From Octopus sinensis (taxonomy: Eukaryota), in contig NC_043010.1 in assembly GCF_006345805.1 (NCBI RefSeq), positions 45,880,001 through 45,944,000 of the forward strand: a stretch of 64,000 nucleotides of DNA, in the 5' to 3' direction. A program made the position numbers and the translations under genes. A model generated the notes under the pieces. The model was not told where the DNA came from. It made no database searches and worked only from the letters and a program-made list of their open reading frames with translations. This document shows, piece by piece, positions 270 through 56,007 of this stretch (the stretch's first letter is position 1; the number at the start of each line of letters is the position of its first letter).

Positions 270-700
270 ACTTCGCCAGTAATTGTAAGGATTATCGAGG
301 GTGGGGTTCCACCAAGAATCAAAACTGGGAATCATGGGTCAACTCCTCTTCGCTGGTTTACCACACAAAATACTACGGAAACCTATTCTAAAGTGGTATA
401 AGGAAACCGGAAAACTGGACTGATACAGAGACAAGTTGACAAACGGAGAACACGACAGAGATGACGAGGAAGAGACCGTTACTATGTTATTTGTTGATGT
501 TGGTAACTAAAATGGCAATTACCAGCGAAGTAATATCAGTTTGAAAGTTCGGCGGCGTTAACTCGGATCATATTCAAACATCCCGCCAGTGAGTAATGGC
601 TGCAGCCGATTCTATAACAAAAACAAAACCGTTTGAGGAAGGGGATTCTCTAATGGAAAATGCATTGGCCCCTGTATCGCTTAAGGTAAGTGTTGTCGCA
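270..700. promoter_or_regulatory. CpG-enriched putative promoter/5' region of the alpha-catenin-like gene
   Basis: Roughly 20 CpGs in about 430 bp around exon 1, against visible CpG depletion in most intronic DNA. Confidence 0.5.
596..685 (+). CDS. alpha-catenin-like gene, exon 1 ([30 protein letters not shown])
   Basis: ATG at 596, 90 nt, donor AAG|GTAAG, phase 0; C-terminal half resembles the family N-terminal helix (ERLLEPLVTQ / ESILEPVAQQ); lies in a CpG-rich zone. Confidence 0.8.
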
Positions 701-1550: not shown

Positions 1551-1887
1551 AGTGTGTATCCTAAATATTTAGTTCGGATTTTCGCTGCACCATCGCTGTC
1601 TGTTGAATAACAGACAGGAGACACTTTTTTTTATTTTGTAAAGGCGACATGGAGAATGGCAGTGCCTCAGTTTAAAGGCGACATGTGTGAGCCATTTCCA
1701 GCTAGGGATGGATAATGAGTTGTAAGCTTAGTTCTTGAAAGTAGCCCCTTATACAATTCTTTTGTTGAAATTATGATTGATAAAGATAATGAAAATGATT
1801 TCTTTTCTTTGAAAAGTAACTGATTATAGAAATTTACATACAAAATACACATTCTTGTTTGCACTTTAGTATATTTCTCTCCCTCTC

Positions 1888-1948
<61 letters not shown>

Positions 1949-1958
1949 ATCTACCTAC

Positions 1959-2020
<62 letters not shown>

Positions 2021-2028: not shown

Positions 2029-2077
<49 letters not shown>

Positions 2078-18171: not shown

Positions 18172-19021
18172 AACACTACACTCATTATAATATAAGATTA
18201 TTGTTGTTATTATCCAGTTGGCCCAGCTAATAGAACTGAGTGATAATCTAAAGGAGAGCGAAATCCATCTACCATCCGTTGAAAACAAAAGCATTGTGAC
18301 TTTTGTTAAAGATGTACATGATGCTACTCAAACTTTAGAATCTGTTGCTAAACATTGGATTGAGGCTTGCAGAAATGATGTAAGTACAAAGAAGACTTTT
18401 CCTTTTCTTTTCAAACTGTTGTGTACATAATTAAATTTACCAAAGAGGAAAAAGAAAATGTTATCCTTGAAAACTTTGTCTTTTACATGTACCAGTTGTC
18501 AGACTACAGCCATGCAGGGGCACCACCCTAAAGAATTTTAGTTGAATGAATTGACCCCCAGAACTTATAATTTTTTTTCTTTTTTTGAGTTTGGTATTTA
18601 TTCTATTGCTCTCTTTTGTTGAACTGCTAAGTTATGGGGGATGTAAGCACACCAACATGGTTGTTAAGCAGTGGTGGGGGACAAACACAGACACAAAGAC
18701 ACACACATAGATACATATATTTACATAAATATATATATATATATATACATTTCTGTATATATTATATATTTATATATATAATTTAAAATGAGGGTGAGAA
18801 ATTAGATATTAATTTAATTAACATCAATTTTACACCAGTGGTCTAGCATATAAAAATCTGAAGGTTCAGTAAATTGTATTATATACATATGAGGGGGCTG
18901 ACCACTATGTGGACAACCCTTATTCTAGAAGTAGATCCGCTATGGTCTTACCATTAAGAAATGTTCTCAAGAAAAATTTAGTAAACACCAGAATTTTCTG
19001 GTCATCCCTCTCATCCCTCTC

Positions 19022-38300: not shown

Positions 38301-41300
38301 ACTCTTTTTGGAGATATGGCCAGGAACTGAATCCTGTTTCCACATATATGATCTTCTGGCAGTAACCCTCTCCAGCCAGGGTTTGACCACAGTTTCCAGC
38401 AGCTTCTTTTGGCCAGTTGAAGTCCCCGTTTGAAGATGTGAGGCAGCATGACTTTATGCTCACTGGAGAGACACTCAAAGGTCACCACATTTTGTGGAAG
38501 CTTGGTTTTCATGATGTCCATGTCACATCTTACAACCTTTACAGTGTTTACAGAACATTAAGCAGCAGTCGTGATGTCAGCTTTTTGATACAGGTAAATT
38601 CATCATGATACCAGTAATTTTTTTCCAATATTCACATGGCTCCCAGTCCTCCATGTCAGCTAACTTTTTCTCTTCTCACCTTCAATTTTAATCTTTATGC
38701 TCTCCAACACCATTGACTGTTCATCAAGCTGTCCCTGAAAAAGGTGACAGAAAAATTGTTAAATTTAACTGAAGCACTGTTAGCTTGCATAAAATACAAG
38801 GAACAGCTCGAAGGAAGTTTCCTTTAAATTTTTACATAAAATTAATTGATTTCTCAAATACTTTAGAAAGTAATAGTGGAATTTTAATTTATGTTAGTGC
38901 TTGATGCTTGAAAGTTTGCAGCTGTTATCTTTTGAAAACTCTGTGAAATGTAATGCTTACTCACATTGTTATGAATTAATCATGCATTATCCTATAGCTT
39001 CAAAATTTCAAGAATGTAATTGTTTATGTTTAGAATGACATTGTAGGGTAGGTTTGTGAGGCCAAATCTGATCACTTTGACCATGAAATAGGTAGAATAT
39101 TTGGGTTGGATTTGGTTGGTTTTAACGCTAAAGGGTTAATACAGTAAATTGTCTTCATTTCGTTTATCATTACAAGAAATTTATTATAAAATGCTAAACT
39201 AGTATTATATGTAATTTTAAATATTATTTCAGTGTACTAGATTATGATAAAATACCATTCAATTTTATAATAATGATAATAATGATGCCTGTGTATGAAT
39301 AGCCATGCTACATAGCAATGAAACATGGGCTATGACCACCAAGGGCATGTGAAGGCTTGAAAGAAATGCGGCTAGTATGCTTTGCTGGATGTGAAATGTC
39401 AGTGTGCATGCATGACAGAGTGTAAGTGTAATACAGTTCTATATTTAAGAGATGAGGAATTATGTGCATTATTTACATTATTTACATTCAATGGATATTT
39501 GTCCTCATCTTGTTTGTTGTTAACACAACGTTTTGGCTGATATACCCTTCAGCCTTCTTCAGGTGTCTTGGGGAAATTTCGAACCTGGGTTCTCATTCCT
39601 ATGGTATTTTCGGTGTTTCTGTGCATTTTCATGTGTGTATAATTACAGTATGTATGTTTCATCATCATCATCATTCATCAACAATAACAACATTTAACGT
39701 CTGTTTTTCCATACTGGTATGGGTTGGATGGCTTAACAAGAACTGGCAAGGCTGGGGGCTGCACTAGGTTCTGTAGTCTGTTTTGGTCTGGTTTGTATGG
39801 CTGGATGCCCTTCCTAACATCAACTACTTCAGTGTACTGGGGAATTTTTACATTGCACCATCACCAGTCCTTTTTATTTGGCATCAGCACTAGTGCTTCT
39901 ACATGGCACCAGCACCCACACCAATGCTTTCTATGTGGCACCTTGGTTTTAGGATATCAATTCTCTTGTGGTGGGCAAGTCTTCTTTATACATTAGTATG
40001 TATGTATGCATGCATGCTTGCATACATAGAATCCATCACTGGAACTGTAAAAATCTGTAAAACTTTCCAGAAATTTATCATTTAAATATATACGAGCATG
40101 TCTAGATATGTAACTATATGCATGGGAATACATACATAAAACATACAAATCTGCATGTATGTATGTACATACATACATACATACATACATACATACATAC
40201 ATACATACAATCAAAAATACCTCGTTGTTGATGTTGAAATTCCAATGATGGAACCTTGGATCTGGGTTAGAAAATGGTTCTTTCTCTATTGGCAAGAAAT
40301 CTTGAAATAAACTGAATAATGACATACATACATATGCACACATATACATATATATGTACGTATGTATGTATGCTTGCATTGTACTATATTGTATTTGTAT
40401 GTGTATATTTCAGGCCAAAGCAGCTTTAACTGAAGAAAACTGGACCAGCCTTGATCAACATTTTGAAACATGGATCTACCTGTTAATCAAACATGCAATG
40501 TTTGTGGCTCATCTCATTGTTGAAGAACGTAGAAGTCCACTGATTAATATTTGCCTTAAGGTAATAACAATTTTATTTTTACCTGTGGTTGCTGCTATTG
40601 TTGGTAAAATGTCAAAATCTGAACTATTTTAGCCTGCATGTTGTTAGCATTTCATTCCTTCATGCATAGGGTTTGTCCATGGACAAATTGAACTCAACAC
40701 TGAAAAAAAAAAATCAACAAAATCAGAGAGGTTCTATATTATCTTTGGTGCCCATTTTCCATAGAACTAAGAATTGGTTTTTTAGTTGTTTGTTCTTTAT
40801 ACTTTGTTTCTTAATGTTGACTGAATTCAAAGTTATGAAGTTTAACCATTTAGTATTCAGCTTTCTCTGTCAAATGTAATGCTTGTTTATTCACATTGTT
40901 TTGAATGAATCATGTATTATATTGTAGCTTTGGGACTTTGATGATGAGTTTGTTTACTTTTAGAATGGCAATATAGGGTTGGTGTAAAAGGTTGGATCTG
41001 GCTGGTTTGAACTCAAAACAGGTAGAATATTTGGGCCAGACATGGCTTGTTTGAATGCTGAAGGGTTAAATGTGACTCCTGTTGTTTTTGTTACCAGGTT
41101 TGTTTAATAAGTGCCTTGTTAAGCCAAACCATTTCACAGACTGGGATGTTCTTAAACTCAGAATTTCAAATATGGCCCTAATTTTTCATCACTTTTTGGA
41201 AATATATGTTATCAGTAGCATAGCATGGGTTTTAACTACCCTGTATGCCAGCAAATTTGACTGCCCTCTTTCCTAACTACAACATATTTTTCACTACAGC

Positions 41301-42473
41301 AAACACAAATATATAAATGGTCACACTATGAAGTCCACACGCTCCAAGCTACACCAGTTTACTTTGTCTAAATCATAAACTACACCTAAAGTTTTACTAT
41401 AGAGATTGGAACAAGACGGATAAGTACACTGATGAATCCATGCATCTATTACAGATTGCATGGTGGAGCTTCTCAAATTAGCTACTATAAATGTTGGGGT
41501 TTTTTTTCCAGTTACTAAACTGTAGCATGAAATTGTGCTAGTCTAGCTTCACAAGTACCTCACTTATTTAGCTGTCACTTAGCTTTATCCAGAGAGGCTA
41601 TTTTAGATATATCCACCATAATTAGATACCATACTTATAAATTATAAATTATAAATTAATGGCTGAGATTTTAATGTGAATCATTAGATATTATAAGTAC
41701 ATTAGAAAGAATGGATAAAGATATCCTTGAATGAAAAGTATCTAAAGTTTTTCTCTCTACACTCTGAAGTAGACTTTATCATTTGTTCCCTTAGAAGAAT
41801 CAGTAAGATAAGGGTCTTTAATATGCCTTGGTTGAAGCAGCTGAATATTGGTGGGCAGCAAGCTGGCAGAATCATTAGCAGATTGGATAAAATGCTTCGC
41901 AGCATTTATGAGTTGGTCAGGCAAAAATATGTAATGCCCGTAAACTTTACAGATCCTTCAATCACTGCTGAGATTAATATGGCTGATATTTAGCCTGAAA
42001 ATCTGCTGGAAATATGTGAGAGAATCTGGGAGTTTGGTCAGTATGCTTGGATCAGAGTTAACTCTGCTAAAGGCAGCCAACAACTAGGTGGTGATGTTAA
42101 ACCTGCTATTCAGTGTATGTAGCCTTATCTACATTTATCATGTCATTTTCCTTATTCCTTTTTGATATTTCTAAAATAAAGCATCAAAATTACATTTCAA
42201 ATATATTTCATTTTATTTACACTTGTGCTTTTTTTCTTCAATTTTGCCTTTTCTTTTCTATAGCTTCTAGAAGCTAAAAACAGCTTGTATGAATTCCAAG
42301 ATTCAGTCACTGCAGAAACTCAAGATTTATACTGCGAGTAAGCATACTTCAGTTCTGTTTTTTGCTACATTTCAATTACATTCTCATAGTGACAAGCACA
42401 TGCATACACATACTTGCACTACGTATAAATGAAGGTACATGTATCTATATAAACACTCATCATCATCATCATT

Positions 42474-42505: not shown

Positions 42506-44779
42506 TATCCTATAACATTCATTTTCCATGCTGGCATGGGTTGGACAGTTTGACCAGAGCTGGTAAGCAGGAGACCTGCACTAGGTTCCTGTCTGATTTG
42601 GTTTGGTTTCTATGACTGAATGCCCTTCCTAATGCCAAACACTTTACAATGTGTGCAGGATGCTTTTAACATGGCACTGGCATGAATGCTTTTTACATGG
42701 CACCAGCACATGGTTCTTGCAGGCCAATCCTCTACACCAGGAATAGCAGCATTAGTACTTCTGCTGTGGAGACAGGTCTTTTTGAGTACAGCAAGGCACC
42801 AGATATTTCGGTCCTTTGTCATCTTCTCTACAAAGTTCAGTGTCCTGAGGTTGTCCTTCAGGACTTCACCCCATGTCTTCCTGGGTCTTCTATGTGTGTT
42901 ATATGTACTTATATTCATATATTTTTCTCTTTATTACTTTGGTGGGTAGCAAGCTGGCAGAATCATTAGTACAATGGATAAAATGCTTAGCAGCATTTCT
43001 TTTGGCTTTTTGTTTTGAGTTCAAATTTCACCAAAGTTGACTTTGGTTTTCATCCTCTCGATAAATTAAGTACCTTGGGGTTGATGCATTCAATTAACCC
43101 TACCACCACTAAATTTCGAACCTTAGAAGTAATTCTTTGATAGACAATTCACCAGAATTAGCAGTTTTGATATCAGAATCATTGTGAATATTAGAAAATC
43201 ACTTGTATTCCATGACGATCCCTACTGGGTGAAAATAGAAGGCATTCCACTGTTTGACATATTCATAGGGAGCTATGATAGTGTTGGGATTGCTGATCTC
43301 ATTGAGTTATTCATCTTTGATCATCTAAAACAATGTATACACCTCCACAGACTGGTCTTTTATAGAGATGATGGTCCAGTTACATCAAACCATATGAATG
43401 GCCTTGTCGTGAATAAATTCAGGAAGAATGTCCAAAAAATTTGTCCTAACTATAACTACTACCATGAACTTAGGTTAGCTTCCTAGATTTAACCCTGAGG
43501 CTGAGTCAGACTGTTATTAGATACATGTAATTCTAACCAAATGTGTTGAGTACTTCTTTCTTTCATTTGTATATGATATATTCCTTTTCCTTTTTATAGT
43601 GACAGCTATAATAGGCTGTGTAACAATTATGAGGATGACTGTGACAAAGCTGTTGACTTACTTTATCAACTGGAAGATAAAGTAAACCAGGAAATTCTTT
43701 ATCTTATGGTCAATGTCTTTGCTGAAACTTCAGAACCATTAGAACGATTAGTTGATCCAATTTTATTTCCAGAAACAGTAAGTGTGTTACTTTTTAACCA
43801 TTTTTATTTTCATTTATAAAAATTAAAAGTATTTGAAACTAGTGAAATTTGGCAGATAACTTTCAATGGCTAGAGCCATAGATTTCCGCAAGATGGTGAA
43901 GAAAGGTCAAGAAATTAAAAAATAGAAATGTTTGGTATTACAGAGCTATTTTGCATAAACAAATGTTTTGTCAGACATTAAGTTTGCTAAAGGTTGTGAT
44001 AAAGTGTAATAAAACTCTGGATATCTATTTCTTATTCTTATGTGCCCTTTTCAAGCCTAGCCAGGCTTACGGGCCCAGTTTCCCGGTTTCTATGGCGTAT
44101 GTGTTCCCCCTAGCTGTACAGGACGCCAGTCCATCACAGCGTTACTCAAGAAACAGGAAGAAAGAGTGAGAGAAAGTTGGGGTGAAAGAGTACAACAGGG
44201 GTCGCCATCACCCGCTGCTGGGAATCGAAACTATGGTCCTCTGACTGCAAGTCCGCTGCCCTAACCACTGGGCCATTGCACCTCCACTAAATAAATGCGC
44301 CCTTTTAAAGCCTAGCCAGGCTCATGGGCCTGGTTTCCCGGTTTCAATGGCATAGGTGTTCCCCAGCTGGACGGGGCGCCAGTCCATCGCAACATTACTC
44401 ATTTTTGCCAGCTGAGTGGACTGGAACAATGTAAAATTAAGTGTTTTGCTCAAGAACACAATGTGTCGCCCGGTCCAGGAATCAAAACCACAATCTTACG
44501 ATCATGATGCTGTCGCCCTAACCAGTAAGCCACACACCTCCACGGATATCTGTTTATTCATTTTATATCAGAATTTGTGAACAGTAGCATTATTGGTTAC
44601 ATTTTTCTAATGGACCAATCTCTGGTTCATGCATTTCTTTTGACAAATGTGGCAAAAAAGTGTCTGTTACTCAGTGGACTTCATTCAAAGACCTGCTTTA
44701 GTTAATGTGTATATCCTTCACCAATATTCAGCAGAAGATATAAACATACATATACATACATGTGTGCACCCCCACCGTA

Positions 44780-46279: not shown

Positions 46280-49200
46280 ATCCGTCCGTCCATCTAACTA
46301 TCTATCCATCTATCTATCTATTTGCATGCTGCCAATATTCTTCTAAAACATGTAAATATTTTACCAAATCATTTCTCTTTACGTAAGTGTGAGGCTTTGA
46401 GTATTTGGGGAAAAAATCGCTGTGTATGTCACCATCATCATCATTTTACACCCGTTTTCCTTGCTGGCATGGGGTGAATTCCACTGGAACTGACAAGTCT
46501 GAATACTGCATCAGTTCCTGCTGGATGCCCTTCATAATGCCAACTATTTTCCTGGGTGTCCTGGGTGCTTTTTATGTGGCACCAGCAGCACCAAAGCCAT
46601 CAAGTAACTGCAGGACAAAACCCTGCAACTGAGGTGAGGTGGGTTGTATTGAGGAACAGAAAAAGGAGTCTTACATTATTGAGGATGTGGGTTTGGATAT
46701 ATTTGCCTTTGACCACATGCTATCCTGTCAATTATAAAAGTATGCAATTAACCCTGGGCTGTAATCAAGTCACTGAAGGAACTTTGGGGGTAACATAATT
46801 AAAAATATGTTTTAACCTTTTCGTTACCAGCCCGGCTGAAACCGGCTCTGGTTCTGAGAACAAATGTTTTGTTTTCATAAGTTCTGAATTAAAATATTCC
46901 ACCAAACCTTAGTTACAATTTATGTTCTTAACACTAGCTGAATGATAACTAAGTTATTTTACTAAATTCTTTGTTATATTTTTTCATTGTTGAATTAATA
47001 AAAAGTTTTTTGACTTCTGCCAAAAGTCAGAATGCCATGATAGACCGTTAGCTCCTACATGCATTTTTTTCTCTCCTTGTTTCTTTTCTGTGTATCTTTC
47101 TGTCGAAGAGCATAGGCTCGAAACGTAAAAGACTTGTTCTATTTCTATTCCTAAAGTAATTGAAAGAAACACAGAGCATCTCAAAATAAATACAGTAATG
47201 AAAGGGTTAATAGGAGATTTGATTTTTTATTCATTTCTGTTATTTATAGCTGTATGTATCATGTTATTAAGATTTTTGTTGAATAAATGTTTTCTTTGGT
47301 ATTATCCAGCAGAGTGATTGCTGTCAAGAAAGACTGAAATCCTTACAAGATTACTTTTACGATCATTTAGACAATATGTACGAAGTTGCACGTTTTATCA
47401 TTGCTGGCTCCAGAAGATCAAAGTGTAAGTGACTAAATATTCTTTGAGCTCTAGAAAATGGCAACAATAATCAGTGCTAAACATAAATATCATGAACATC
47501 ATGATAGAACAGGCTCTTATCAAACTGAATCAACAAACCTTTTTTGTAATATATGTGTTTCTACAGTTTCTCACTTCCCTCATCTACATTGTGTGTGTGT
47601 GTGTGTGTGTATGTATTCTTCTCTTTCTGTTTTTAATTTAATGTAAATTTTGATTGGCCACCTGTTTGGTAGTAAAGCTGTGAAGGAAAGTATCTTGTTT
47701 TAACTGTCATTCTTCATATGTATATATGTATGTATAAAGTCACTGAATGGATACTTTGGGACATCATAGTCAGTTAATGATAGACATTACTAAATAGTGT
47801 ATGACAACACCCTAGAAGCTCAAGTATCACTGTTTTCTTATGTCAGTAGAGGCTAAATTTGTTTATGTGGGCAGTTGTTTGTGGATACCTGCTACTGATG
47901 ATGCACAAGGAAGCAGAAATTTTAATTTAGCCATTCCACCACTGCTGCTGGGTACTTTTTGTCATCTACTGATATTCTTCTATGCATTTTAGTGCTCTAT
48001 GTGTATATGAGATGCTTTCTCAAAACAAACGCCACAGTTTTGTGGCTTTCTACAGTATATCCTCATGAAGTAAGATATGCAGAATGCTATTCTGAACTAA
48101 CACTGCTTCCAATTAATTGTTTTACTTACTTATGAGATTGTAACTTATTGCATTAGTATGTTTATCTCTTGAGGGGAAGTGAAGAGTCACAGATGGCTAA
48201 GTCATAAAATACTGTTACAATGAATTAAGGGCCAGTGATTTATATCTCATCATCAACACTATGTTGTGTCCCTGGAAAAACTCTCAATACAGCATCATGC
48301 CTGCTTATCCAGAAAGTTAATACTCCAACAAATTGGCTTATTATATCTCTCTGCAACTAAATAAGAATTCTTTATCTATAAATATTAATAAGATGTAAAA
48401 TTCCTGGTTTATAATTTGAGCTGTAGAGACAAAATGACTTAGTAAATATTGTGTTGGATGAGCAACTTGCATATTTGTTTTTCAAGTCCCTTCACCTGGT
48501 CATCAAGAAAAAAGTATACCTGATTATATGTAAGAATTGTGTTTCTACTATCATATTTGTTTTGAAATCCATCACCTGTGCTTCAATTAATTTTTTAAAT
48601 AATGAAAAATTTAGTGAAATACCTTTGTCTGTACTATCCCACCAAGGTCGACTTTGCCTTTCATCCTTTCGGGGTTGATAAATTAAGTACCAGTTGAGCA
48701 CTGGAGCTGATGTAATTGACTTGTTACCGCCCCGCAAACTTTCAGGCCTTGTGCCTATGGTAGAAAGGATTGTTAAAGTGGAATATAAATGAACATGAAA
48801 TTTTGATGAAAAGTTTTAATATACATCACTTTAAAATAGGGAATTTGTATCTTTGAACCAAGGGCAATCTCAGGTTGGTATCAAAAGGGTTCTCAACCAG
48901 GGTCTATATGGCCCCTGAGGATCCATATAAGATTTTTTTGGGGGGTGGGGTCACACAGCAAAATAGTAAATTGAAGATCCACAATAATATTTTGAGGGCC
49001 CCTGAAAAGATTTTGTTTTAGATGTTTGTATTGGTATTTATTGCTAGAAACAGCAAGGTTTCTTTCTCTAACATTTTACATAGGTCAACCTACACAAGTT
49101 AATGTGTGAAAAAACAAAATAGGAATTTTAGAGGAAGTTTCTATAAAACTAGTTTTCAAACATTGGCTGGTTGGGGTGGAGACATCAGAATAAAATAGTA

Positions 49201-49698: not shown

Positions 49699-50430
49699 GT
49701 GTGTTTTAGTGAGATTTAGTGTGTAAAAAAATATGAGAAAATATTATTAACACAACAATATTTATTTACTGTCTAGTTGTGCAGCAGTTTGAAATGACAA
49801 TCAAAAACTTGGAATGCCTTGATCCAGAAATCTCTTCGTTGGTTAGTCTACATATTCAAAAAATTTCAGTTAATCCATTCGATTCTTTGTCTGAATCCAT
49901 GACCACAAGACTAAAAAGTCTTATAAAAGAATGGAAGAAGTTGTTGGCTCATCTTGTATTTTTACTAGACACAATGGTGGATCCTGACATTTTCATCACA
50001 ATGTCTTGTAAGTTTAATAGATGTTTTTTTTTTCTTTCAATGAAACATGCTAAAGTAATTTCGTTTTTGAATTTGGTTTGCAAGGTTCTTTATATGAGTT
50101 CATGTGTTGAAGCATATTCCATTGTGTCTGGGGAGAGTTAAGACTATTGAAAAGGTTGCAAGACGCAATGAAAATTTTAGGAAAATAAAAATAAGAAATA
50201 AGTGGAAATTTTACCGGTGAGTGTGTTACATTATAAGGCACAAAAAAGAATATGTCGCTCCCCAAACACAACAGAAAATGCTAAAGTAATTGTTAAAAGA
50301 TTTTGCAAACACTGTTATATAAAGAAGTATAGTTTTAAATATGTCTTCTCCATGCAAGCATGGAAAAATGCATTAAAATGATGTGTGTGTGTGTGTGTGT
50401 GTGTGTGTCTGTGTGTGTGTCTGTGTGTGT

Positions 50431-52834: not shown

Positions 52835-54978
52835 TCATCATCATCGTTTAACGTCTGCTTTCCATGCTAGCATGGGTTGGACAGTTCAACTGGGGTCTGG
52901 GAAGCCAGAGGGCTGCACCAGGCCCAGTCTGATCTGGCAGTGTTTCTATGGCTGGATGCCCTTCCTAATGCCAACCACTCCGTGAGTGTAGTGGGTGCTT
53001 TTTACATGCCCACCGGCACACGGCCACGATTGGATGGTGCTTTTTACGTGCCACCAGCACGGAGGCCAATGATGATGATGATGATGACAATGATATATAT
53101 ATATATATATATACTCAAAATAAGCAACAGGATATCCAGAGGTGATACAGTATGACCATTTCAAGCGGCTCCGTTAAGTGAACAATGCAATCATTACATC
53201 AATTTAAATGCAGTGCTATCCTCAGTTGCATAAAAAAATAAATAGAATTTTTTTAATCAGTTGGACACATTTGTATAATTTTACTTATTCACCTTATTTT
53301 GAAGTTGTACGGATAATACTGCACTAAATTTTGGTGCTTCAACTTAGGTACCTACTTCATCTGAATTTCAATTATGTTGCTATATATCTATATATATGTA
53401 TATATTTATTGAAGTGTACAATGTCATATATCCATTGCGGCTGATCTTACCAATTAGTTTTGCACTAGGGGTTCAACAGGGTGTTACATAAAAGCCTGAA
53501 TATATAACCATGTTCTCTTCAGAGCCCCGAGAGCAAAACTGATTGGTATGATTGACTTTGAGTTTCTTAGACATCTTCTCTGTGCGTGTGTGTGTGTGTG
53601 TGTGTGTAATACTCATGAACACATAATATGTATATACATGTGTTATTTTTGTTTATTTTCACAGTAAAACGATTAGAGGATGAAATGAATGTGTGTGTTG
53701 ATGCTGCTAACAAAGGTGATCTGCAGTATTTACTAAGAACAAGTCGTTCTATCCGCGCAAAGTGTTCCCGAGTGGCTCAGTTCCTGACTAATCTGAAATC
53801 TTCTGGAAACATCTTTCCAAGTCCATTAAATGTTATCCACCTTATTGATCAGATTCATCAGTGTAAGTAACTTTGTTGTAACATGCTCTCTGTACTATGT
53901 ACCAGTAACCATTTTATGTGCACTTCTAACACCAATCCTCTCTCTCTCCTCCATCCGACATGTTGAACCTGTTGCCTCTGTTCTGACAGATTCGTTAGAT
54001 TTCTTTAAATTCCTTGAGTATTTGAGATCTGAGATTTCAGAAACTACTGATGTAAGGAAATCCACACTTAATACTTATAGTGTGGAACTCTAAACTTTAT
54101 GTTAATTATCAAATAGAATATATTTATTTTAAATTTTATTTATTTTCATTGTTTACAAAACCGATCTTATTGCAAAAAATAATCAAAAAATGAAATGTGA
54201 TTGAAATAGGGACACATATAAGTACATAATAGAAATTTTCTCAGATATTAGGGTCTGTTGTACATAGGACAGATACATTCAAATATGTGTAGCAAACGTT
54301 TTATTTATATTCTTATTTATAAGTATTTTAGTTTACTTTAAGTCATATATTTTTTCCAATTATGTAAAAGAATGGATGGAGTACACTTAAAATTAACAAT
54401 TCTGTTGTGTCATTTTTGTTAAAACCCATAATATTGTCAACACACTGTTGTAAAACTTCATCTTCCTGTAGAAAAGTGGTTTCTTGAGATCTTCTCTGTG
54501 GCCACATGAAAATTTAGGCTCAGCAACTGAAAGCTGAGCAAATATCTGAAATTTATGGCACCGTTAACTGCTGTTTACAACAAGGAGTTGTACTTAATCA
54601 ATCTGTAGCTCATTGCAAGTTAAATGTCTTTTTCTTGTATAATACATTGAGAAACTGTGTATGACCCCTTAGCTAATAGGCTTGCTCAAGGAGTGAAGTT
54701 AATATAAATAAAAGATTGTCATTGCCAAATTAGATATTTCAAACCTTGTTTATTTTGGTTTCTCTCACATATAAGTCAAATTGTTGTCTTTCATTTTTAA
54801 TAATAAAACATTGTGTACAGTGCTCAGGTGCACTACAACTCATCTAAAGTGTATATATAATCAGGTGTAGTTTGATGGAATGAATTAGAATATGTTAATT
54901 GAACTAATGTTAATGTTAGGAATGTATTTTAAAAAATTTTTGTATCCACTTTTGAGTAGCTATGAAAGTTGGATAGTT

Positions 54979-55062: not shown

Positions 55063-56007
55063 GTGTGTGTGTGTGTGTAAGTGTGTATATATATACGTGT
55101 GTGTGTGTGTGTATTAAAAGCTTCAAGGAAGCAATAAGGTGAGTACAAGCACTCAGCTCTGAGTACATTGTAATTCCTGTTCTCTTGTACATTATTTAAT
55201 TTCTGATTTAATTCCATATATGCATGCATACATACATACATACATACATACATACATAATACATACATACATACATACATGCATGTAATATTTGTTGAAA
55301 TGTTGTATATTTGCCACCTCATTGCCTTCCAAATGTTAGAATTATTTTCTTTTTCTTTATGTATTCCAGCACTGAAATTTCACAGAGCACAACATAAACT
55401 ACTGAAGAAAGCTTTAACACCTTCAAATCACAATTCAATATTTAAATGCAAAACATTTCTGGATTCCACTTCATCGTTAGTGGAACAAATCTGGCACTGT
55501 GCGAATTTTGTTTGTTCTGCTCTGTTCAACTCATCCACTGAACAAACATATCCTGAACATCTCTCACCCATACTCCCCACAGAATATTCCCATTGTTCAG
55601 TGAACCCTGTTGATGATTTGCTCATCTCTGATTGTCACTGTACGACATCCAAACATTCAGAGGAAAAAACTAATTCCAATAATTACTTTTCATCTTTCAT
55701 TAATTCTCCTTGTATAGTCACCAAACAGTTTTGCCAAAATGTTGACATGAACTGCTCTACCCAACACAATATAATTAATTACGAAGAGAAGACTGCATAT
55801 CATCCAAAACTATGTTCAAGTTGCCCCTGCATTGGTAACTACAAAACTGAAAGTCCATTTATCAGTCCATCCCGTTGTGTTATGGATCTCAATTTAAAAG
55901 CAAGTCACTCTACCCACGACCCTTTCGAATTGGACTCCTTTCTCGATTGTCTTCCCTTGTCACTCCCAAAATTCCACACAGAATCCAAGCATGATACTCT
56001 GGTGTAG
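596..56007 (+). CDS. 13-exon gene for a divergent alpha-catenin/vinculin-family protein (about 803 aa) lacking the C-terminal actin-binding domain
   Basis: Manually spliced exons 596-685, 18218-18379, 27078-27233, 30391-30498, 35103-35285, 37714-37845, 40414-40560, 42264-42337, 43600-43777, 47310-47424, 49777-50007, 53665-53862, 55370-56007. All introns are GT-AG with matching phases; the total of 2412 nt is open to a TAG stop. Segments align by eye to alpha-catenin: [17 protein letters not shown] ~ VERLLEPLVTQVTTLVN; [19 protein letters not shown] ~ KANRDLIYKQLQQAVTGIS; [15 protein letters not shown] ~ SDSFLETNVPLLVLI; [44 protein letters not shown] ~ DDFLAVSENHILEDVNKCVIALQEKDVDGLDRTAGAIRGRAARV. 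Confidence 0.85.
1888..2180. repeat. (CTAT)n tetranucleotide microsatellite, about 290 bp
   Basis: Direct reading. Confidence 0.97.
2896..2957. repeat. Perfect palindrome, 28-bp arms, 6-nt spacer
   Basis: ACCAATTAAGGACTGAACACGAAAAGTG-ACTGTC-CACTTTTCGTGTTCAGTCCTTAATTGGT. Confidence 0.95.
4328..5324 (+). mobile_element. RTE-clade LINE, 5'-truncated 3' portion with frameshifts
   Basis: [16 protein letters not shown], Cys-rich insert [59 protein letters not shown], followed by 3' UTR. Confidence 0.85.
7513..7518 (-). promoter_or_regulatory. Candidate polyadenylation signal (AATAAA) of the LicD gene
   Basis: TTTATT on the + strand about 90 nt downstream of the LicD stop codon. Confidence 0.5.
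7608..8606 (-). CDS. Intronless LicD-family (fukutin/FKRP-like) phosphotransferase, predicted type II membrane protein, 332 aa
   Basis: Continuous ORF; first true ATG at 8606 (the ORF track starts at a TTG). N-terminal hydrophobic anchor [19 protein letters not shown], LicD signature [30 protein letters not shown], Cys-containing C-terminus, several N-x-S/T sequons. Confidence 0.92.
   Translation of the reverse strand: MAVKISYIFILLSLVSFLFMMYYRTDIKNTNILKIEPTEERGNCFKILLDGELIVKECYMDRANYTVFKILQESGLTINLSKAHLGSFKPFDLTPKSNNIIQTFTHYLPYTEKVVFLYVFQNFIDICSQNNITFFMKSGTLLGSYRHHGFIPWDDDIDIYVEHSHKNILINSVKKQKDFYLFTPANFQWKYFHKKLSVPIRMNIPFKWPYLDIFFWHTNEKSFYDATRATKVTISEHEWIFPLTKRPFEGALINSPRETLKYLKIEYDVNKCCQNSYSHRYERLSRWNICVQCSKLWENIPYVQHEDLSNCTISEKLIYKNSTISLFNDTIC
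9200..10010 (-). mobile_element. Possible highly degenerate LINE endonuclease-region remnant
   Basis: Non-microsatellite sequence with broken reading frames; weak resemblance to APE endonuclease motifs ([18 protein letters not shown]). Clade not determinable. Confidence 0.3.
11233..11278 (-). ncRNA. Minimal hammerhead-like motif, family 1, inverted copy with truncated stem I
   Basis: Reverse complement of the 13.3 kb copy; same core CTGATGA..GAAA; stem I is cut at the insertion junction. Confidence 0.5.
11454..11682. mobile_element. piggyBac-like MITE
   Basis: TTAA-CCCATTAGTATT ... AATGCTAAAGGG-TTAA termini; homologous copies at 26276, 38938 and 40842. Confidence 0.75.
13294..13339 (+). ncRNA. 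Minimal type I hammerhead-like motif, family 1 (Penelope-like repeat), partly decayed
   Basis: GATAC-CTGATGA-A-GGCTG(loop)CAGCT-GAAA-TG-T-T-GTGTT: stems I and II pair with wobbles; the stem III palindrome ACGT is decayed to ATGT. Confidence 0.6.
15170..16668 (-). mobile_element. R4/Dong-like non-LTR retrotransposon (restriction-like endonuclease type), degenerate 3' part
   Basis: [48 protein letters not shown] and [17 protein letters not shown] motifs; 3' end abuts a (TTA)n array. Confidence 0.75.
16942..17235. repeat. Interspersed repeat family E
   Basis: GAGTGAGAGAGCAG..GCAGGTGG.GCCCAGTTAGAATTTTCTT..; second copy at 57488-57800. Confidence 0.7.
17999..18032 (+). ncRNA. Minimal hammerhead-like motif, family 2
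   Basis: TTT-CTGTAGA-A-GAGC(ATAG)GCTT-GAAA-CG-T-A-AAA. Confidence 0.5.
18218..18379 (+). CDS. alpha-catenin-like gene, exon 2
   Basis: Acceptor TATCCAG|TTG, donor GAT|GTAAGT, 162 nt, phase 0-0; [13 protein letters not shown]...HWIEACRND. Confidence 0.85.
19600..19790 (-). mobile_element. RTE LINE 3' fragment
   Basis: Minus-strand [19 protein letters not shown]...GRGR, homologous to 4960-5110. Confidence 0.65.
20970..21210 (-). mobile_element. Degenerate RTE/BovB-like LINE 3' fragment
   Basis: Minus-strand [12 protein letters not shown] and [14 protein letters not shown] motifs. Confidence 0.5.
21643..21876 (+). mobile_element. tRNA-derived SINE family A, full-length copy
   Basis: GAGCTGGCAGAA..GAGTTCAAATTCC box-B-like head; central GACTTTGCCTTTCATCCTT..GGGGTCGATAAATTAAGTACCAG; many copies in the window. 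Confidence 0.8.
22425..22570 (-). mobile_element. Terminal fragment of the same element as 38020-38130
   Basis: Shared TGGCTGAGAGATAACAGTTT..TGTG.CCCTTGGAAGATCTTT sequence. Confidence 0.55.
23040..23340 (-). mobile_element. Degenerate RTE-like RT fragment
   Basis: Minus-strand [20 protein letters not shown] resembles the K.PGPD.I..E motif upstream of the RT core. Confidence 0.4.
23829..24063 (+). mobile_element. SINE family A, full-length copy
   Basis: High identity to 21643-21876. Confidence 0.8.
24788..25146 (-). mobile_element. RTE LINE 3' end plus UTR
   Basis: Reverse complement of 4970-5324 ([16 protein letters not shown]; GTACTTGACTCAATAGGTCTCC). Confidence 0.8.
25240..25620 (-). mobile_element. 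Interspersed repeat family C (GGAGTGGTTGGCGTTAGGAAGGGCATCCAG core, (GAT)n tail, internal TGGTGCTTTTTACGTGCCAC subrepeats)
   Basis: Near-identical copies at about 52810-53090 and 62290-62600; others at 5330, 19100, 24240, 26477, 29660, 33650, 39650, 42460 and 46430. Confidence 0.75.
26276..26956. mobile_element. piggyBac-like MITE interrupted by a repeat family C insertion (about 26477-26930)
   Basis: Left end TTAACCCTTTATCATT; decayed right end AATGCTAAAGAATTAA after the inserted element. Confidence 0.65.
27078..27233 (+). CDS. alpha-catenin-like gene, exon 3
   Basis: Acceptor TTTTAACAG|TCA, donor CAG|GTATAC, 156 nt, phase 0-0; [17 protein letters not shown]...[14 protein letters not shown]. 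Confidence 0.85.
28837..29010. repeat. (TA)n-flanked AT-rich repeat; near-identical direct copy at 44812-44990
   Basis: AAGGAAATGAAGAAAATGCTGAC...GATAGATTTTTTTCTCTTATA in both; the 44.9 kb copy has a short internal tandem duplication (TTTGTTATGCTTATCA twice). Confidence 0.75.
29060..29335 (+). mobile_element. RTE-clade LINE fragment (second family)
   Basis: [52 protein letters not shown]. Confidence 0.65.
29419..29545 (+). mobile_element. RTE LINE extreme 3' coding fragment
   Basis: [34 protein letters not shown]. Confidence 0.8.
30061..30291 (-). mobile_element. SINE family A, full-length copy
   Basis: Reverse complement of family A. Confidence 0.8.
30391..30498 (+). CDS. alpha-catenin-like gene, exon 4
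   Basis: Acceptor CTTTTTACAG|GTA, donor TTG|GTAAGC, 108 nt, phase 0-0; [36 protein letters not shown] (~LLILADMADVYKLL). Confidence 0.85.
31618..31880 (-). mobile_element. SINE family D (tRNA head GGCTTAGTGGTTAGGGTG..TTCGATTCC, CORE-like)
   Basis: Copies at about 20385-20650 (+), 27590-27830 (-), 61490-61620 (+). Confidence 0.75.
32400..32760 (-). mobile_element. RTE LINE fragment (pre-RT region)
   Basis: [46 protein letters not shown]. Confidence 0.8.
34480..34866 (+). mobile_element. SINE family B (tRNA head, CORE-like CACCTTGGGCAAGTGTCTT, internal microsatellite, tail)
   Basis: Repeated throughout; minus-strand copies at about 11800-12125, 49258-49627, 59620-60240 and 62812-63190. Confidence 0.75.
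35103..35285 (+). CDS. alpha-catenin-like gene, exon 5
   Basis: Long T-rich tract then TTCCAG|GAG, donor GAG|GTAGTT, 183 nt, phase 0-0; [20 protein letters not shown]...[11 protein letters not shown]. Confidence 0.85.
35445..35834 (+). mobile_element. Helitron/Helentron-type non-autonomous element (tentative)
   Basis: Begins ACTAGCAATATTGCCCGGCATTGCTTGGG and ends ACAGACAACTTCAACTTTATATATATAGAGAT, termini resembling HINE/DINE-like elements. Confidence 0.45.
36234..36466 (-). mobile_element. SINE family A, full-length copy
   Basis: Reverse complement of family A. Confidence 0.8.
37003..37556 (+). mobile_element. Internally deleted mariner element with both TIRs and TA target duplication
   Basis: TA|GTGGGTTGTCCAGAAAGTT ... 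AACTTTTCGGACAACCCAA|TA; transposase N-terminus [13 protein letters not shown] joined out of frame to the C-terminus [26 protein letters not shown]. Confidence 0.9.
37714..37845 (+). CDS. alpha-catenin-like gene, exon 6
   Basis: Acceptor ATATAG|GCT, donor AAG|GTAACT, 132 nt, phase 0-0; [21 protein letters not shown] matches the alpha-catenin ANRD helix. Confidence 0.88.
38020..38620 (-). mobile_element. Tc1/mariner superfamily (DD37D/maT-like) transposase remnant
   Basis: [40 protein letters not shown] motifs with frameshifts. Confidence 0.7.
38938..39139. mobile_element. piggyBac-like MITE, left-truncated
   Basis: Same internal sequence; right end AACGCTAAAGGGTTAA. Confidence 0.65.
39300..39427 (+). 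mobile_element. RTE LINE fragment
   Basis: Homologous to 4815-4935 (AMLH..ETWA..RLERN..SML.WM). Confidence 0.65.
39522..39567 (-). ncRNA. Minimal hammerhead-like motif, family 1, G12A mutant
   Basis: Minus strand reads GACAC-CTGAAGA-A-GGCTG..CAGCC-AAAA-CG-T-T-GTGTT: intact stems and ACGT palindrome, but GAAA is changed to AAAA. Confidence 0.55.
40414..40560 (+). CDS. alpha-catenin-like gene, exon 7 (M1 region)
   Basis: Acceptor TTTCAG|GCC, donor AAG|GTAATA, 147 nt, phase 0-0; [31 protein letters not shown] ~ LEERLESIISGAALMADS..DDRRERIVAECN. Confidence 0.88.
40842..41069. mobile_element. piggyBac-like MITE
   Basis: TTAACCATTTAGTATT ... AATGCTGAAGGGTTAA. Confidence 0.7.
42264..42337 (+). 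CDS. alpha-catenin-like gene, exon 8
   Basis: Acceptor TTTTCTATAG|CTT, donor GA|GTAAGC, 74 nt, phase 0-2; [24 protein letters not shown]. Confidence 0.82.
42760..42895 (-). mobile_element. RTE LINE 3' fragment
   Basis: [30 protein letters not shown]. Confidence 0.7.
43180..43480 (+). mobile_element. Penelope-like element reverse transcriptase fragment, degenerate
   Basis: [30 protein letters not shown] resembles the PLE RT motif FDVTMGSYDGAE.CELVGL..LYRDDG. Confidence 0.65.
43600..43777 (+). CDS. alpha-catenin-like gene, exon 9 (M1/M2)
   Basis: Acceptor TTTTTATAG|T, donor ACA|GTAAGT, 178 nt, phase 2-0; [37 protein letters not shown]. Confidence 0.88.
44040..44543 (-). mobile_element. Two tandem family D SINE copies
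   Basis: Unit TGCGCCCTTTT.AAGCCTAGCCAGGCT... occurs twice head-to-tail (about 44040 and 44295). Confidence 0.75.
44990..45220. repeat. Compound (TA)n/(CA)n/(TG)n microsatellite block, one of many
   Basis: Direct reading; source of several spurious IY/HT-rich ORFs. Confidence 0.95.
45750..45787 (+). ncRNA. Minimal hammerhead-like motif, family 2
   Basis: TCTTT-CTGTTGA-A-GAGC(GTAG)GCTC-GAAA-CG-T-T-AAAGA; perfect stems I and II. Confidence 0.6.
45986..46166. repeat. Palindrome with 88-bp arms (one T/G mismatch) and 5-nt loop
   Basis: Arms 45986-46073 and 46079-46166, loop ATATA; part of the right arm is repeated directly at about 46175-46234. Confidence 0.92.
46812..47210. mobile_element. Second piggyBac-like MITE carrying an inserted family 2 hammerhead-bearing repeat
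   Basis: TTAACCTTTTCGTTAC ... GTAATGAAAGGGTTAA termini; insert at about 46980-47160. Confidence 0.6.
47095..47132 (+). ncRNA. Minimal hammerhead-like motif, family 2
   Basis: TCTTT-CTGTCGA-A-GAGC(ATAG)GCTC-GAAA-CG-T-A-AAAGA; perfect stems I and II, GUA triplet at the cleavage position. Confidence 0.6.
47310..47424 (+). CDS. alpha-catenin-like gene, exon 10 (M2)
   Basis: Tandem acceptor TATCCAG|CAG, donor AAGT|GTAAGT, 115 nt, phase 0-1; [24 protein letters not shown] ~ EVKEYAQVFREHANKLIEVANL. Confidence 0.85.
48884..49243. mobile_element. hAT-like MITE
   Basis: GGGTTCTCAACC ... GGTTGAGAACCCCTG terminal inverted repeats; partial copies at about 28612 and 35930-35968. Confidence 0.6.
49777..50007 (+). 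CDS. alpha-catenin-like gene, exon 11 (M2)
   Basis: Acceptor GTCTAG|TT, donor TCTT|GTAAGT, 231 nt, phase 1-1; NLECLDPEI...[27 protein letters not shown] ~ QLEALCPQV...EQWEKQVRVLTDAVDDITSIDDFLAVS. Confidence 0.88.
50123..50274. mobile_element. Non-autonomous element with TGTGTCTGGGGAGAGT terminal inverted repeats
   Basis: Both TIRs present; a longer relative lies at 20000-20280 and an end fragment at 50575-50667. Superfamily not assigned. Confidence 0.55.
51150..52760 (-). mobile_element. CR1/L2-clade LINE remnant, internally deleted and degenerate
   Basis: C-terminal [31 protein letters not shown] motif at 51279-51480; decayed endonuclease-like sequence at 52400-52700. Confidence 0.7.
53665..53862 (+). 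CDS. alpha-catenin-like gene, exon 12 (M3)
   Basis: Acceptor TTTTCACAG|TA, donor CAGT|GTAAGT, 198 nt, phase 1-1; strongest alpha-catenin match ([35 protein letters not shown]). Confidence 0.9.
55370..56007 (+). CDS. alpha-catenin-like gene, terminal exon 13 (end of M3 plus Ser/Cys/His-rich tail)
   Basis: Pyrimidine tract then TTCCAG|CA, phase 1, open 638 nt to TAG; [19 protein letters not shown] ~ FIDASRLVYDGIRDIRKAV, then about 160 aa with no similarity I can recognise, ending KHDTLV*. Confidence 0.78.

What the first reader, a model, noticed from the sequence alone, without database searches (positions are those of the whole stretch)
596..56007. Hidden 13-exon divergent alpha-catenin paralog without the actin-binding domain
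Seen: 13 short exons, several absent from or only partly covered by the ORF track, splice in phase into an 803-aa ORF. Established: alpha-catenin has N, M1-M3 and a C-terminal F-actin-binding domain. By-eye alignment covers N through the last M3 helix; after that the protein runs into about 160 aa of unrelated sequence and stops. Inference: a lineage-restricted, fast-evolving paralog (neither alpha-catenin, alpha-catulin nor vinculin proper). It could keep partner-binding or mechanosensing bundles while uncoupled from actin, acting as an adaptor or natural dominant-negative. Drosophila Serendipity-alpha is a precedent for a derived family member, but orthology is not shown here.
Basis: partly seen in the sequence, partly recalled or inferred. 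Interest (0 to 1): 0.75.

Follow-up and report, generated by a model that had tools for sequence, protein, structure and literature searches.

The report
Octopus alpha-catenin-like gene lacking actin-binding domain
The 13-exon gene is real and encodes the octopus copy of an old, little-studied fourth branch of the vinculin/alpha-catenin family (the branch that includes fly Serendipity-alpha), which in cephalopods has lost its actin-binding end and instead finishes in a floppy tail with a conserved docking-type motif.

Summary
Thirteen + strand exons (window 596-56007), all GT-AG and in phase, give an 809-aa protein. This matches the RefSeq model of O. bimaculoides LOC106874078 ("uncharacterized protein").

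Residues about 19-651 are a confident vinculin/alpha-catenin N plus M1-M3 helical fold (Pfam PF01044, 133 bits). Residues 655-809 are predicted disordered and match nothing. No actin-binding domain (ABD) is present. No ABD-like exon lies in the 208 kb downstream, nor in the 10 kb after the gene in three other cephalopod genomes.

The gene is not alpha-catenin, alpha-catulin or vinculin, which sit on other chromosomes. But it is not a lineage-restricted paralog either. It is the single cephalopod member of a pan-bilaterian clade, with 100/100 tree support. That clade includes arthropod "serendipity alpha" proteins. Its usual form is about 1500 aa: N-M, a roughly 680-residue helical insert, then a canonical ABD.

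What is cephalopod-specific is loss of the insert and the ABD, a long stem branch, and a tail ending in the conserved H-[D/N]-T-L-V (class I PDZ-ligand consensus). Function is inferred: a scaffold anchored through its tail, possibly still touching actin through the M region as Sry-alpha/Spt do.

The parts
596..685 (+). Exon 1 (aa 1-30), ATG at 596, donor GTAAGT
18218..18379 (+). Exon 2 (aa 31-84), N-domain helices
   Evidence: long-clade HMM hit
27078..27233 (+). Exon 3 (aa 85-136)
30391..30516 (+). Exon 4 (aa 137-178)
35103..35285 (+). Exon 5 (aa 179-239)
37714..37845 (+). Exon 6 (aa 240-283), end of N domain and the linker to M1
40414..40560 (+). Exon 7 (aa 284-332), M1
42264..42337 (+). Exon 8 (aa 333-357, ends in phase 2)
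43600..43777 (+). Exon 9 (aa 357-416). Carries the clade signature [11 protein letters not shown] (ETSEPLERL at aa 399-407) and gives the strongest exon-level hit to the long-clade HMM
47310..47424 (+). Exon 10 (aa 417-455), M2
49777..50007 (+). Exon 11 (aa 455-532), M2/M3
53665..53862 (+). Exon 12 (aa 532-598), M3
55370..56007 (+). Exon 13 (aa 598-809 plus TAG). Holds the last two M3 helices, then the tail
55540..56004 (+). Tail, aa 655-809. Predicted disordered, rich in Cys/Ser/Pro/His, no match to any PDB chain, dN/dS about 1.2 against O. bimaculoides (3 synonymous against 14 nonsynonymous changes)
55549..55575 (+). Y-P-E-H-L-S-P-I-L (aa 658-666). MAFFT aligns it with the conserved post-M3 linker motif N-H-P-x-I-L-S-P-L-R of the long relatives
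55990..56004 (+). C-terminal H-D-T-L-V (aa 805-809). H, T, L and V are invariant in Octopus, Argonauta and Acanthosepion, and the motif fits the class I PDZ-ligand consensus [S/T]-x-hydrophobic-COOH

Best explanation
This is a genuine protein-coding gene under purifying selection. [quoted passage not shown] In most animals the clade member is about 1450-1600 aa: N1-N2-M1-M2-M3 bundles, a linker carrying an HP-x-ILSPLR motif, a roughly 680-position helical insert, and a canonical C-terminal five-helix ABD. In the cephalopods sampled (Octopus, Argonauta, cuttlefish) everything after the linker motif is missing. The protein keeps the five helical bundles (aa ~19-651). These are followed by a tail that is about 155 residues in Octopus, shorter in the cuttlefish, fast-evolving and predicted disordered. 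The tail always ends in H-[D/N]-T-L-V. Inferred mechanism, not shown: the bundles act as a partner-binding or mechanosensitive scaffold, and the tail docks the protein on a PDZ scaffold. Any link to actin is either indirect or goes through the M region, as reported for Sry-alpha/Spt. The ancestral direct ABD link is gone.
For: Gene reality: 13 GT-AG exons in phase, identical structure in O. bimaculoides, and dN/dS 0.11 over the folded part. Superfamily: Pfam Vinculin at 133 bits covering profile positions 7-536 of 852; phmmer to alphaE-catenin at E=1.6e-15; AF2 model with helices 19-651 at high pLDDT; Foldseek top hits are sponge vinculin and full-length alpha-catenin at E~1e-13. Clade: a profile of three cephalopod orthologs hits the ~1500-aa proteins at E=1e-51 to 1e-78, against 3.7e-15 for alpha-catenin. 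Those proteins come from bivalves, gastropods, Lingula, Tubulanus, Owenia, echinoderms, Glandiceps, Branchiostoma and fishes, plus Oratosquilla 'serendipity alpha'. The careful ML tree separates this clade, cephalopods included, from vinculin + alpha-catenin + alpha-catulin at 100/100 (the quick tree agrees). The signature ET.EPLERL is found in 4/4 cephalopod proteins, 13/22 long proteins and 0/17 alpha-catenin, vinculin or alpha-catulin proteins. Pfam Serendipity_A is passed by Haliotis (60 bits), Oratosquilla (47.5) and Potamilus (39.7). ABD loss: an ABD HMM scores 260-330 bits on the long relatives and nothing significant on the cephalopod proteins. The scallop C-terminus matches vinculin tail and alpha-catenin ABD structures at E=1e-17 to 1e-25, while the octopus tail matches nothing at E<=10. 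The long-clade HMM against six-frame ORFs of the window plus 200 kb downstream hits only the gene's own exons, at profile positions 27-559. The same is true for the O. bimaculoides, cuttlefish and Argonauta loci with 10 kb flanks. In Argonauta the next gene, a short-chain dehydrogenase, starts 7 kb after the stop, and its octopus counterpart lies about 44 kb after the stop. Genome-wide searches with a scallop ABD and a scallop middle region find only alpha-catulin and the C7 family gene, or nothing. Conserved terminus.
Against: No transcript evidence could be examined, so the 3' end rests on gene models, conservation and the absence of downstream homology. The cephalopods group with the two very long arthropod branches (92/98, with a long-branch warning) rather than with the other molluscs. 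Mollusc monophyly is not rejected, but only marginally (AU p=0.093). The window protein itself does not reach Pfam Serendipity_A (no hit at E<=1). The tail evolves almost neutrally between the two Octopus species (dN/dS ~1.2 on 17 substitutions), so only its ends look constrained. PDZ binding, partner binding and actin binding are all untested. I could not read Miller et al. 2013, so equating this clade with their 'uncharacterized alpha-catenin-like' group is inferred from later citations.
Confidence: 0.72

Rival explanations
1. One reading: a cephalopod-restricted, fast-evolving duplicate of alpha-catenin (or of alpha-catulin or vinculin) that lost its ABD.
For: By single-sequence comparison the best solved-structure match is alphaE-catenin. 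The protein is very divergent and only cephalopod sequences align end to end.
Against: Profile search finds non-cephalopod relatives 35-60 orders of magnitude better than alpha-catenin. [quoted passage not shown] The clade-specific ET.EPLERL and HP..LSP motifs are shared. Ordinary alpha-catulin (C1) and two further full-length family genes (C2, C7) exist elsewhere in the genome.
Confidence: 0.03
2. The gene model is incomplete: an ABD is encoded by further 3' exons or by an alternative isoform beyond the window.
For: Relatives in other phyla do carry a C-terminal ABD about 700 residues after M3. NCBI lists more than one isoform for the related locus name. No RNA data were available here.
Against: No ORF with similarity to the middle insert or the ABD occurs in 208 kb downstream, although the same HMM detects the gene's own divergent exons. 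None occurs in the 10 kb after the gene in three other cephalopod genomes, and Argonauta has only 7 kb before the next gene. The stop follows a terminus conserved from octopus to cuttlefish. Whole-genome searches find no orphan ABD of this clade.
Confidence: 0.05
3. An old protostome paralog. An ABD-less 'short' gene shared by arthropods (Sry-alpha/Spt type) and cephalopods arose by an ancient duplication. The long gene was then lost in these lineages and the short one lost in the other lophotrochozoans.
For: Cephalopod proteins group with Oratosquilla 'serendipity alpha' and the Tachypleus protein at 92/98 and 95. All three lack the ABD.
Against: The join involves the three longest branches of the tree, and treekit flags them. 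Mollusc monophyly is not rejected (AU p=0.093). No sampled species shows both a long and a short copy, so this scenario needs many reciprocal losses. The arthropod proteins extend to HMM positions 644-727, whereas the cephalopod ones stop at about 560-600, which fits independent truncations.
Confidence: 0.12
4. A decaying, functionless remnant of the ancestral long gene.
For: The protein is truncated, sits on a long branch, and has a nearly neutral tail.
Against: dN/dS is 0.11 over 651 codons. The ORF and all splice sites are intact in four species spanning octopods and decapodiforms. The AF2 fold is confident.
Confidence: 0.03

Closest known systems
[quoted passage not shown] It is mentioned by Clarke et al. 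2016 (PMC4948710) and by the 2026 MBE ctenophore paper (PMC13245172), both citing Miller et al. 2013. Here it is represented by ~1500-aa proteins such as Lingula XP_013384611, Haliotis XP_067657935 and Branchiostoma CAH1257676.
   Same: N1-N2-M1-M2-M3 region (HMM score 336 bits), the signature ET.EPLERL, the post-M3 HP..LSP motif, and the tree position.
   Different: The cephalopod protein lacks the ~680-position helical insert and the C-terminal ABD. It is half the length, sits on a long branch, and ends in H-[D/N]-T-L-V, which the long proteins do not have (one search lists their C-termini).
Drosophila Serendipity-alpha / Spitting image (Zheng et al. 2013, PMC3820746); arthropod proteins that NCBI names 'serendipity alpha' (Oratosquilla XP_076035233).
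   Same: Same clade in my trees. All are derived, fast-evolving members. The Oratosquilla and Tachypleus proteins, like the cephalopod one, have no ABD match. For Drosophila Sry-alpha/Spt I rely on the paper's statement that they align only with the middle (VH2) sequences. The paper already noted vertebrate uncharacterized proteins in this clade.
   Different: The window protein does not reach the Pfam Serendipity_A threshold. Sry-alpha/Spt are described as aligning only with the middle (VH2) part, whereas the cephalopod protein keeps a full N domain. Direct F-actin binding is reported for Sry-alpha/Spt and is untested here. No Drosophila sequence was in my tree.
Alpha-catenin (CTNNA1-3, HMP-1)
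   Same: The architecture of five four-helix bundles N1-N2-M1-M2-M3.
   Different: No ABD, a different clade, and about 18% identity. Beta-catenin and vinculin binding are unknown.
Alpha-catulin (CTNNAL1)
   Same: A shortened superfamily member.
   Different: Octopus has its own alpha-catulin gene on C1; one of its exons is 99% identical to O. bimaculoides alpha-catulin X1. Alpha-catulin keeps an ABD-homologous C-terminus. It forms a separate 100/100 clade.

Membership tests
Vinculin/alpha-catenin superfamily (Pfam PF01044) | Passes the curated Pfam threshold (38.1 bits) | tested here: met
   133.2 bits, E=1.4e-38, residues 20-571 on profile positions 7-536. The orthologs score 99 and 119 bits.
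Vinculin/alpha-catenin superfamily (Pfam PF01044) | Fold made of successive four-helix bundles (N/D1, M) | tested here: met
   AF2 gives 20 helices between residues 19 and 651, mostly at pLDDT above 85. Foldseek probability is 1.00 to sponge vinculin, alphaE-catenin and vinculin.
Alpha-catenin proper | C-terminal five-helix F-actin-binding domain | tested here: not met
   There is no significant ABD-HMM hit, the tail has no PDB match, and the tail is predicted disordered.
Alpha-catenin proper | Groups within the alpha-catenin clade | tested here: not met
   It is separated from that clade by 100/100 branches.
Alpha-catenin proper | Binds beta-catenin through the N domain and recruits vinculin through M1 | not testable with these tools
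   Needs binding assays or complex modelling.
Alpha-catulin | Orthology to CTNNAL1 | tested here: not met
   A distinct alpha-catulin gene lies at G000:C1 ~203.05-203.22 Mb. Alpha-catulins form their own clade.
Vinculin | Orthology to vinculin, with vinculin tail | tested here: not met
   The vinculins form a separate clade, and the protein has no tail domain.
Uncharacterized alpha-catenin-like / Sry-alpha clade | Phylogenetic placement inside the clade | tested here: met
   A 100/100 branch delimits 24 rows that include the 4 cephalopod proteins. The profile E-values agree.
Uncharacterized alpha-catenin-like / Sry-alpha clade | Clade motifs F.ET.EPLERL (M1/M2) and HP..LSP[LI] after M3 | tested here: met
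   ETSEPLERL at aa 399-407 and YPEHLSPIL at aa 658-666. The ET.EPLERL signature is absent from the 17 alpha-catenin, vinculin and alpha-catulin sequences checked; the HP..LSP motif was compared only with the clade's long relatives.
Uncharacterized alpha-catenin-like / Sry-alpha clade | Typical long architecture (insert plus ABD, ~1500 aa) | tested here: not met
   The long-clade HMM covers only positions 18-560 of 1532. This is the feature that makes the protein a variant.
Pfam Serendipity_A (PF05482) | Passes the curated threshold (35 bits) | tested here: not met
   There is no hit at E<=1 for the window protein or its two orthologs. Clade relatives do pass: Haliotis 60.2, Oratosquilla 47.5, Potamilus 39.7 bits.
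Sry-alpha/Spt functional class | Direct F-actin binding by the middle region | not testable with these tools
   Reported for Sry-alpha/Spt in PMC3820746. It needs co-sedimentation with the octopus protein.
Class I PDZ-binding C-terminus | [S/T]-x-hydrophobic at the free C-terminus, conserved among orthologs | tested here: met
   The termini are -HDTLV (Octopus spp., Argonauta) and -HNTLV (Acanthosepion). H, T, L and V are invariant while the flanking tail diverges.
Class I PDZ-binding C-terminus | Actual binding to a PDZ domain | not testable with these tools
   Needs a peptide/PDZ array or a pull-down.

The most novel reading that the evidence does not exclude
Cephalopods converted an ancient ABD-bearing alpha-catenin-like protein into an ABD-less scaffold that is tethered by a newly fixed C-terminal PDZ ligand. 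This parallels the independent truncation that produced the ABD-less arthropod members of the clade (Sry-alpha/Spt type). If so, the N-M module of this unstudied fourth clade has an actin-independent function, or acts on actin through the M region, and that function is what selection preserves.
Probability: 0.35. Interest if true: 0.55.

Novelty: new variant of a known kind. Interest (0 to 1): 0.4.

Why it matters
The vinculin/alpha-catenin superfamily is usually taught as three branches. A fourth, widely conserved branch has been mentioned only in passing, and the only functional data for it come from the highly derived fly proteins Sry-alpha and Spt. This locus shows three things. First, the fourth branch is present once per genome across Bilateria, under inconsistent database names such as 'catenin alpha-1', 'vinculin-like', 'CTNNA1' and 'uncharacterized'. 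Second, its usual form is a ~1500-aa protein with a canonical ABD. Third, cephalopods, and apparently arthropods, keep only the N-M half under strong constraint. That natural deletion series tells experimenters which half carries the conserved function. It also gives a concrete handle for finding partners, the -[D/N]TLV terminus. For the genome scan itself the result is modest: the gene is already modelled, and the 'lineage-restricted paralog' reading is wrong.

Tried and rejected
1. An exon-by-exon Pfam PF01044 search of the whole genome did not flag the window at all. The exons are too divergent individually, and only the spliced protein passes. So absence in such scans is weak evidence, and I used a clade-specific HMM instead.

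2. The genome search does not accept alignments for this genome. I fell back on single scallop sequences and a local hmmsearch.

3. The C6 PF01044 hit was checked as a possible second copy. It is an isolated alpha-catenin-like exon with an in-frame stop.

4. The C1 locus was considered as the possible 'true' long-clade ortholog. It is alpha-catulin.

5. Searches for more cephalopod orthologs (squid, Nautilus) with P0003 and with the window protein returned only the same three proteins. The loss therefore cannot be dated relative to Nautilus.

6. Intron read-through was considered as the origin of the tail. I judged it unlikely, because the tail begins with the clade's own linker motif.

7. A Cys-rich metal-binding module in the tail was considered. 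Only one Cys of the CxxCxC stretch is invariant across genera and AF2 predicts no structure there, so I rejected this.

8. Miller et al. 2013 (PMC4118598) is not held in the library.

Full report
**Setting.** The window is G000:C14:45,880,001-45,944,000 of a 2.72-Gb, AT-rich genome (32-39% GC). Its exons are 95-99% identical to Octopus bimaculoides, so it is an Octopus species.

Yes. A rough concatenation of the visible + strand ORFs already passed Pfam Vinculin. It also retrieved three annotated cephalopod proteins:
- O. bimaculoides LOC106874078, 'uncharacterized protein', 809 aa (P0001);
- an Argonauta hians protein of 822 aa (P0002);
- an Acanthosepion pharaonis protein of 724 aa (P0003).

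tblastn of P0001 onto the window, followed by inspection of the splice sites, gives 13 exons between 596 and 56007. All have AG acceptors and GT donors and compatible phases. The CDS is 2430 nt, giving 809 aa.

Several lines show the gene is functional:
- It is single-copy in this genome.
- Against O. bimaculoides the exon structure is identical.
- dN/dS is 0.11 for codons 1-651, with introns differing by 5-12%.

It is therefore a constrained gene, not a chance chain of ORFs. It is also not hidden, since it is already modelled in the sister species.

**2. What is the protein?**

- The exact protein scores 133 bits on Pfam Vinculin, with residues 20-571 on profile positions 7-536 of 852.
- It aligns to alphaE-catenin residues ~81-558.
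- AlphaFold2, run on P0001 with a 26-sequence alignment, gives confident helices from 19 to 651. By helix count these form N1, N2, M1, M2 and M3. Residues 655-809 have pLDDT 25-37.
- Foldseek's best matches are the sponge vinculin homolog, full-length alpha-catenin and vinculin.
- The tail matches no PDB chain even at E<=10.

**3. Which family member is it?**

This is where the interpretation changes. A profile of the three cephalopod proteins was searched against 1.8 billion cluster representatives.
- Above every alpha-catenin (best 3.7e-15) it finds a set of 1450-1580-aa proteins at E=1e-51 to 1e-78. They align over query positions ~20-600.
- Their sources are bivalves (Potamilus, Ylistrum, Pinctada, Mactra, Mya), gastropods (Haliotis, Littorina, Patella, Biomphalaria, Plakobranchus), Lingula, the nemertean Tubulanus, the annelid Owenia, the echinoderms Asterias and Antedon, the hemichordate Glandiceps, Branchiostoma, and fishes (Callorhinchus, gars, Scleropages, Brienomyrus).
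- Two arthropod proteins also appear. NCBI calls one of them 'serendipity alpha' (Oratosquilla).
- Database names for this set are inconsistent: 'catenin alpha-1', 'vinculin-like', 'CTNNA1', 'uncharacterized'.
- Several members pass Pfam Serendipity_A as well as Vinculin: Haliotis 60 bits, Oratosquilla 47.5, Potamilus 39.7.

A careful ML tree of the N-M region (38 rows, LG+C20 PMSF) gives four groups: vinculin with a choanoflagellate protein, alpha-catenin, alpha-catulin, and this 'long' clade. The branch separating the long clade, with the four cephalopod proteins inside it, has 100/100 support (the quick tree agrees).

Two sequence motifs support the placement:
- The signature F-x-E-T-x-E-P-L-E-R-L is present in all cephalopod proteins and in most long-clade proteins. 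It is absent from the 17 alpha-catenin, vinculin and alpha-catulin sequences checked.
- The tail begins with YPEHLSPIL, which aligns with the clade's conserved post-M3 motif NHP-x-ILSPLR.

The other family members are encoded elsewhere in this genome:
- Two full-length family genes lie on C2 and C7.
- Alpha-catulin lies on C1. One of its exons is 99% identical to O. bimaculoides alpha-catulin X1.
- A dead alpha-catenin-like exon lies on C6.
- A Haliotis long protein finds nothing in the genome except exon 9 of the window gene.

The window gene is therefore the only octopus member of this clade and, most simply, its ortholog.

One caveat applies. Within the clade the cephalopods attach to the two very long arthropod branches (92/98, flagged as a possible long-branch artefact). 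An AU test does not reject cephalopods plus bivalves plus gastropods as one clade, but only marginally (p=0.093). An old protostome paralogy therefore cannot be excluded.

**4. Is the ABD really gone?**

- The long relatives end in a canonical ABD. The scallop C-terminus hits vinculin-tail and alpha-catenin-ABD structures at E=1e-17 to 1e-25.
- An ABD HMM scores 260-330 bits on full-length long-clade proteins and nothing significant on the cephalopod proteins.
- On the 1532-position clade HMM, the cephalopod proteins cover only about positions 18-600. Alpha-catenin covers 12-625 plus 1312-1469. The clade's usual form is therefore alpha-catenin-like with a ~680-position insert before the ABD, and cephalopods lack both the insert and the ABD.

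I approached it by homology:
- The clade HMM against all six-frame ORFs of the window plus the next 200 kb hits only the gene's own exons, at E down to 1e-13 and profile positions 27-559. Nothing from the insert or the ABD appears.
- The same holds for the O. bimaculoides, cuttlefish and Argonauta loci with 10-kb flanks.
- In compact Argonauta the next gene, a short-chain dehydrogenase, begins 7 kb after the stop. Its octopus counterpart lies about 44 kb after the stop.
- Whole-genome searches with a scallop ABD and a scallop insert find only alpha-catulin and the C7 family gene, or nothing. These single-sequence, exon-wise searches are insensitive.

The protein's last residues are H-D-T-L-V in Octopus and Argonauta and H-N-T-L-V in the cuttlefish, while the rest of the tail diverges and changes length. 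A conserved terminus argues that this stop is the functional end.

**5. How it probably works.**

Shown here:
- a constrained five-bundle N-M module;
- loss of the ABD;
- a disordered, Cys/Ser/Pro/His-rich tail that evolves almost neutrally between two Octopus species (dN/dS ~1.2, on 3 synonymous and 14 nonsynonymous changes);
- two conserved islands in the tail, the linker motif at its start and the terminal [D/N]-T-L-V.

Inferred, not shown:
- The terminus fits the class I PDZ-ligand consensus, so the tail may tether the scaffold to a PDZ protein.
- The bundles probably bind partners, as they do in alpha-catenin and vinculin.

Whether the protein is uncoupled from actin is open. Zheng et al. 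2013 (PMC3820746) report that Sry-alpha and Spt co-sediment with F-actin, including a middle fragment of Spt (residues 250-461). [quoted passage not shown] The cephalopod protein keeps its M region. 'Dominant-negative' is speculation.

**6. Relation to what is known.**

- Clarke et al. [quoted passage not shown] 2013.
- Zheng et al. 2013 described Sry-alpha/Spt as a distinct clade and noted that uncharacterized zebrafish and Xenopus proteins group with it.

I could not read Miller et al.. Equating their clade with mine is therefore an inference from taxon range and description.

On that reading the clade is known but unstudied. The cephalopod gene is a structural variant of it: the C-terminal half is lost and a new conserved terminus has been gained. 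The ABD-less arthropod members look like a parallel case.

**7. Verdict.**

- Observation: confirmed.
- Interpretation: partly supported. It is right on family, ABD loss, fast evolution and 'none of the three classic members'. It is wrong on 'lineage-restricted paralog' and on 'hidden'.
- Interest: moderate. There is no new kind of system, but the gene gives a clean natural truncation in a neglected branch of a heavily studied family, plus a testable docking motif.

Noticed in passing
window 7611-8636 (- strand), inside intron 1: An intronless 342-codon open frame of the LicD family (Pfam PF04991, E=1e-21), with an N-terminal hydrophobic anchor, nested antisense in intron 1. O. bimaculoides has a called 346-aa LicD gene at the same nested position (L034 16605-17645, -), so the nesting is conserved.
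   Followed up: partly
G000:C6:11710688-11710828 (-), locus L033 4688-4828: An isolated alpha-catenin-like exon, 58-69% identical to alpha-catenins over about 45 aa, with an in-frame stop and no neighbouring exons in 10 kb. It is probably a pseudogene fragment.
   Followed up: partly
G000:C1 ~203,048,483-203,217,185 (-); L011: The ordinary alpha-catulin gene of this genome. It spans about 170 kb. One exon is 99% identical to O. bimaculoides alpha-catulin isoform X1 (P0163).
   Followed up: yes
L036 (Argonauta hians) against the window: The orthologous Argonauta gene spans 10.8 kb against 55.4 kb in Octopus for the same coding exons, roughly a five-fold intron expansion. Its neighbours are an ADAM-type metalloprotease upstream and a short-chain dehydrogenase 7 kb downstream. 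The dehydrogenase's octopus counterpart lies about 44 kb past the stop (window-extended coordinates 99.7-101.9 kb, on L016-L017).
   Followed up: partly
proteins P0005-P0017, P0027, P0030 (not in the window): The long clade has a conserved ~680-position helical region between M3 and the ABD, with invariant Trp residues and motifs such as GDK..VN.L..DLL.WTNHI and DLENLT.T. No Pfam family covers it. Database names for these proteins are inconsistent and often wrong ('catenin alpha-1', 'CTNNA1', 'vinculin-like').
   Followed up: partly
window 37196-37480 (+) and 38059-38557 (-), introns 5-6; 4307-5215 (+), intron 1: Open frames that look by eye like Tc1/mariner transposase C-terminal parts, and a retroelement-like ORF with a weak PHD/C1 zinc-finger hit (E~2e-3). 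None reached a Pfam threshold. The introns are largely repeats.
   Followed up: no
window 28606-29040, 34310-34630, 49482-49706, 59766-60149 and others: A short interspersed element recurs in both orientations. In translation it reads ...[22 protein letters not shown]..., often next to (TA/CA)n-type microsatellites. The same sequence produced many spurious tblastn hits.
   Followed up: no
window 1820-2661 (+): A long tandem array whose translation reads (YLSI)n in all three frames, a simple tetranucleotide-type repeat in intron 1.
   Followed up: no
window 55540-56004: The tail has 11 Cys in 155 residues, including [10 protein letters not shown]. Only one of these Cys (C749, followed by P750) is invariant across the three genera. 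Its function is unexplained.
   Followed up: partly
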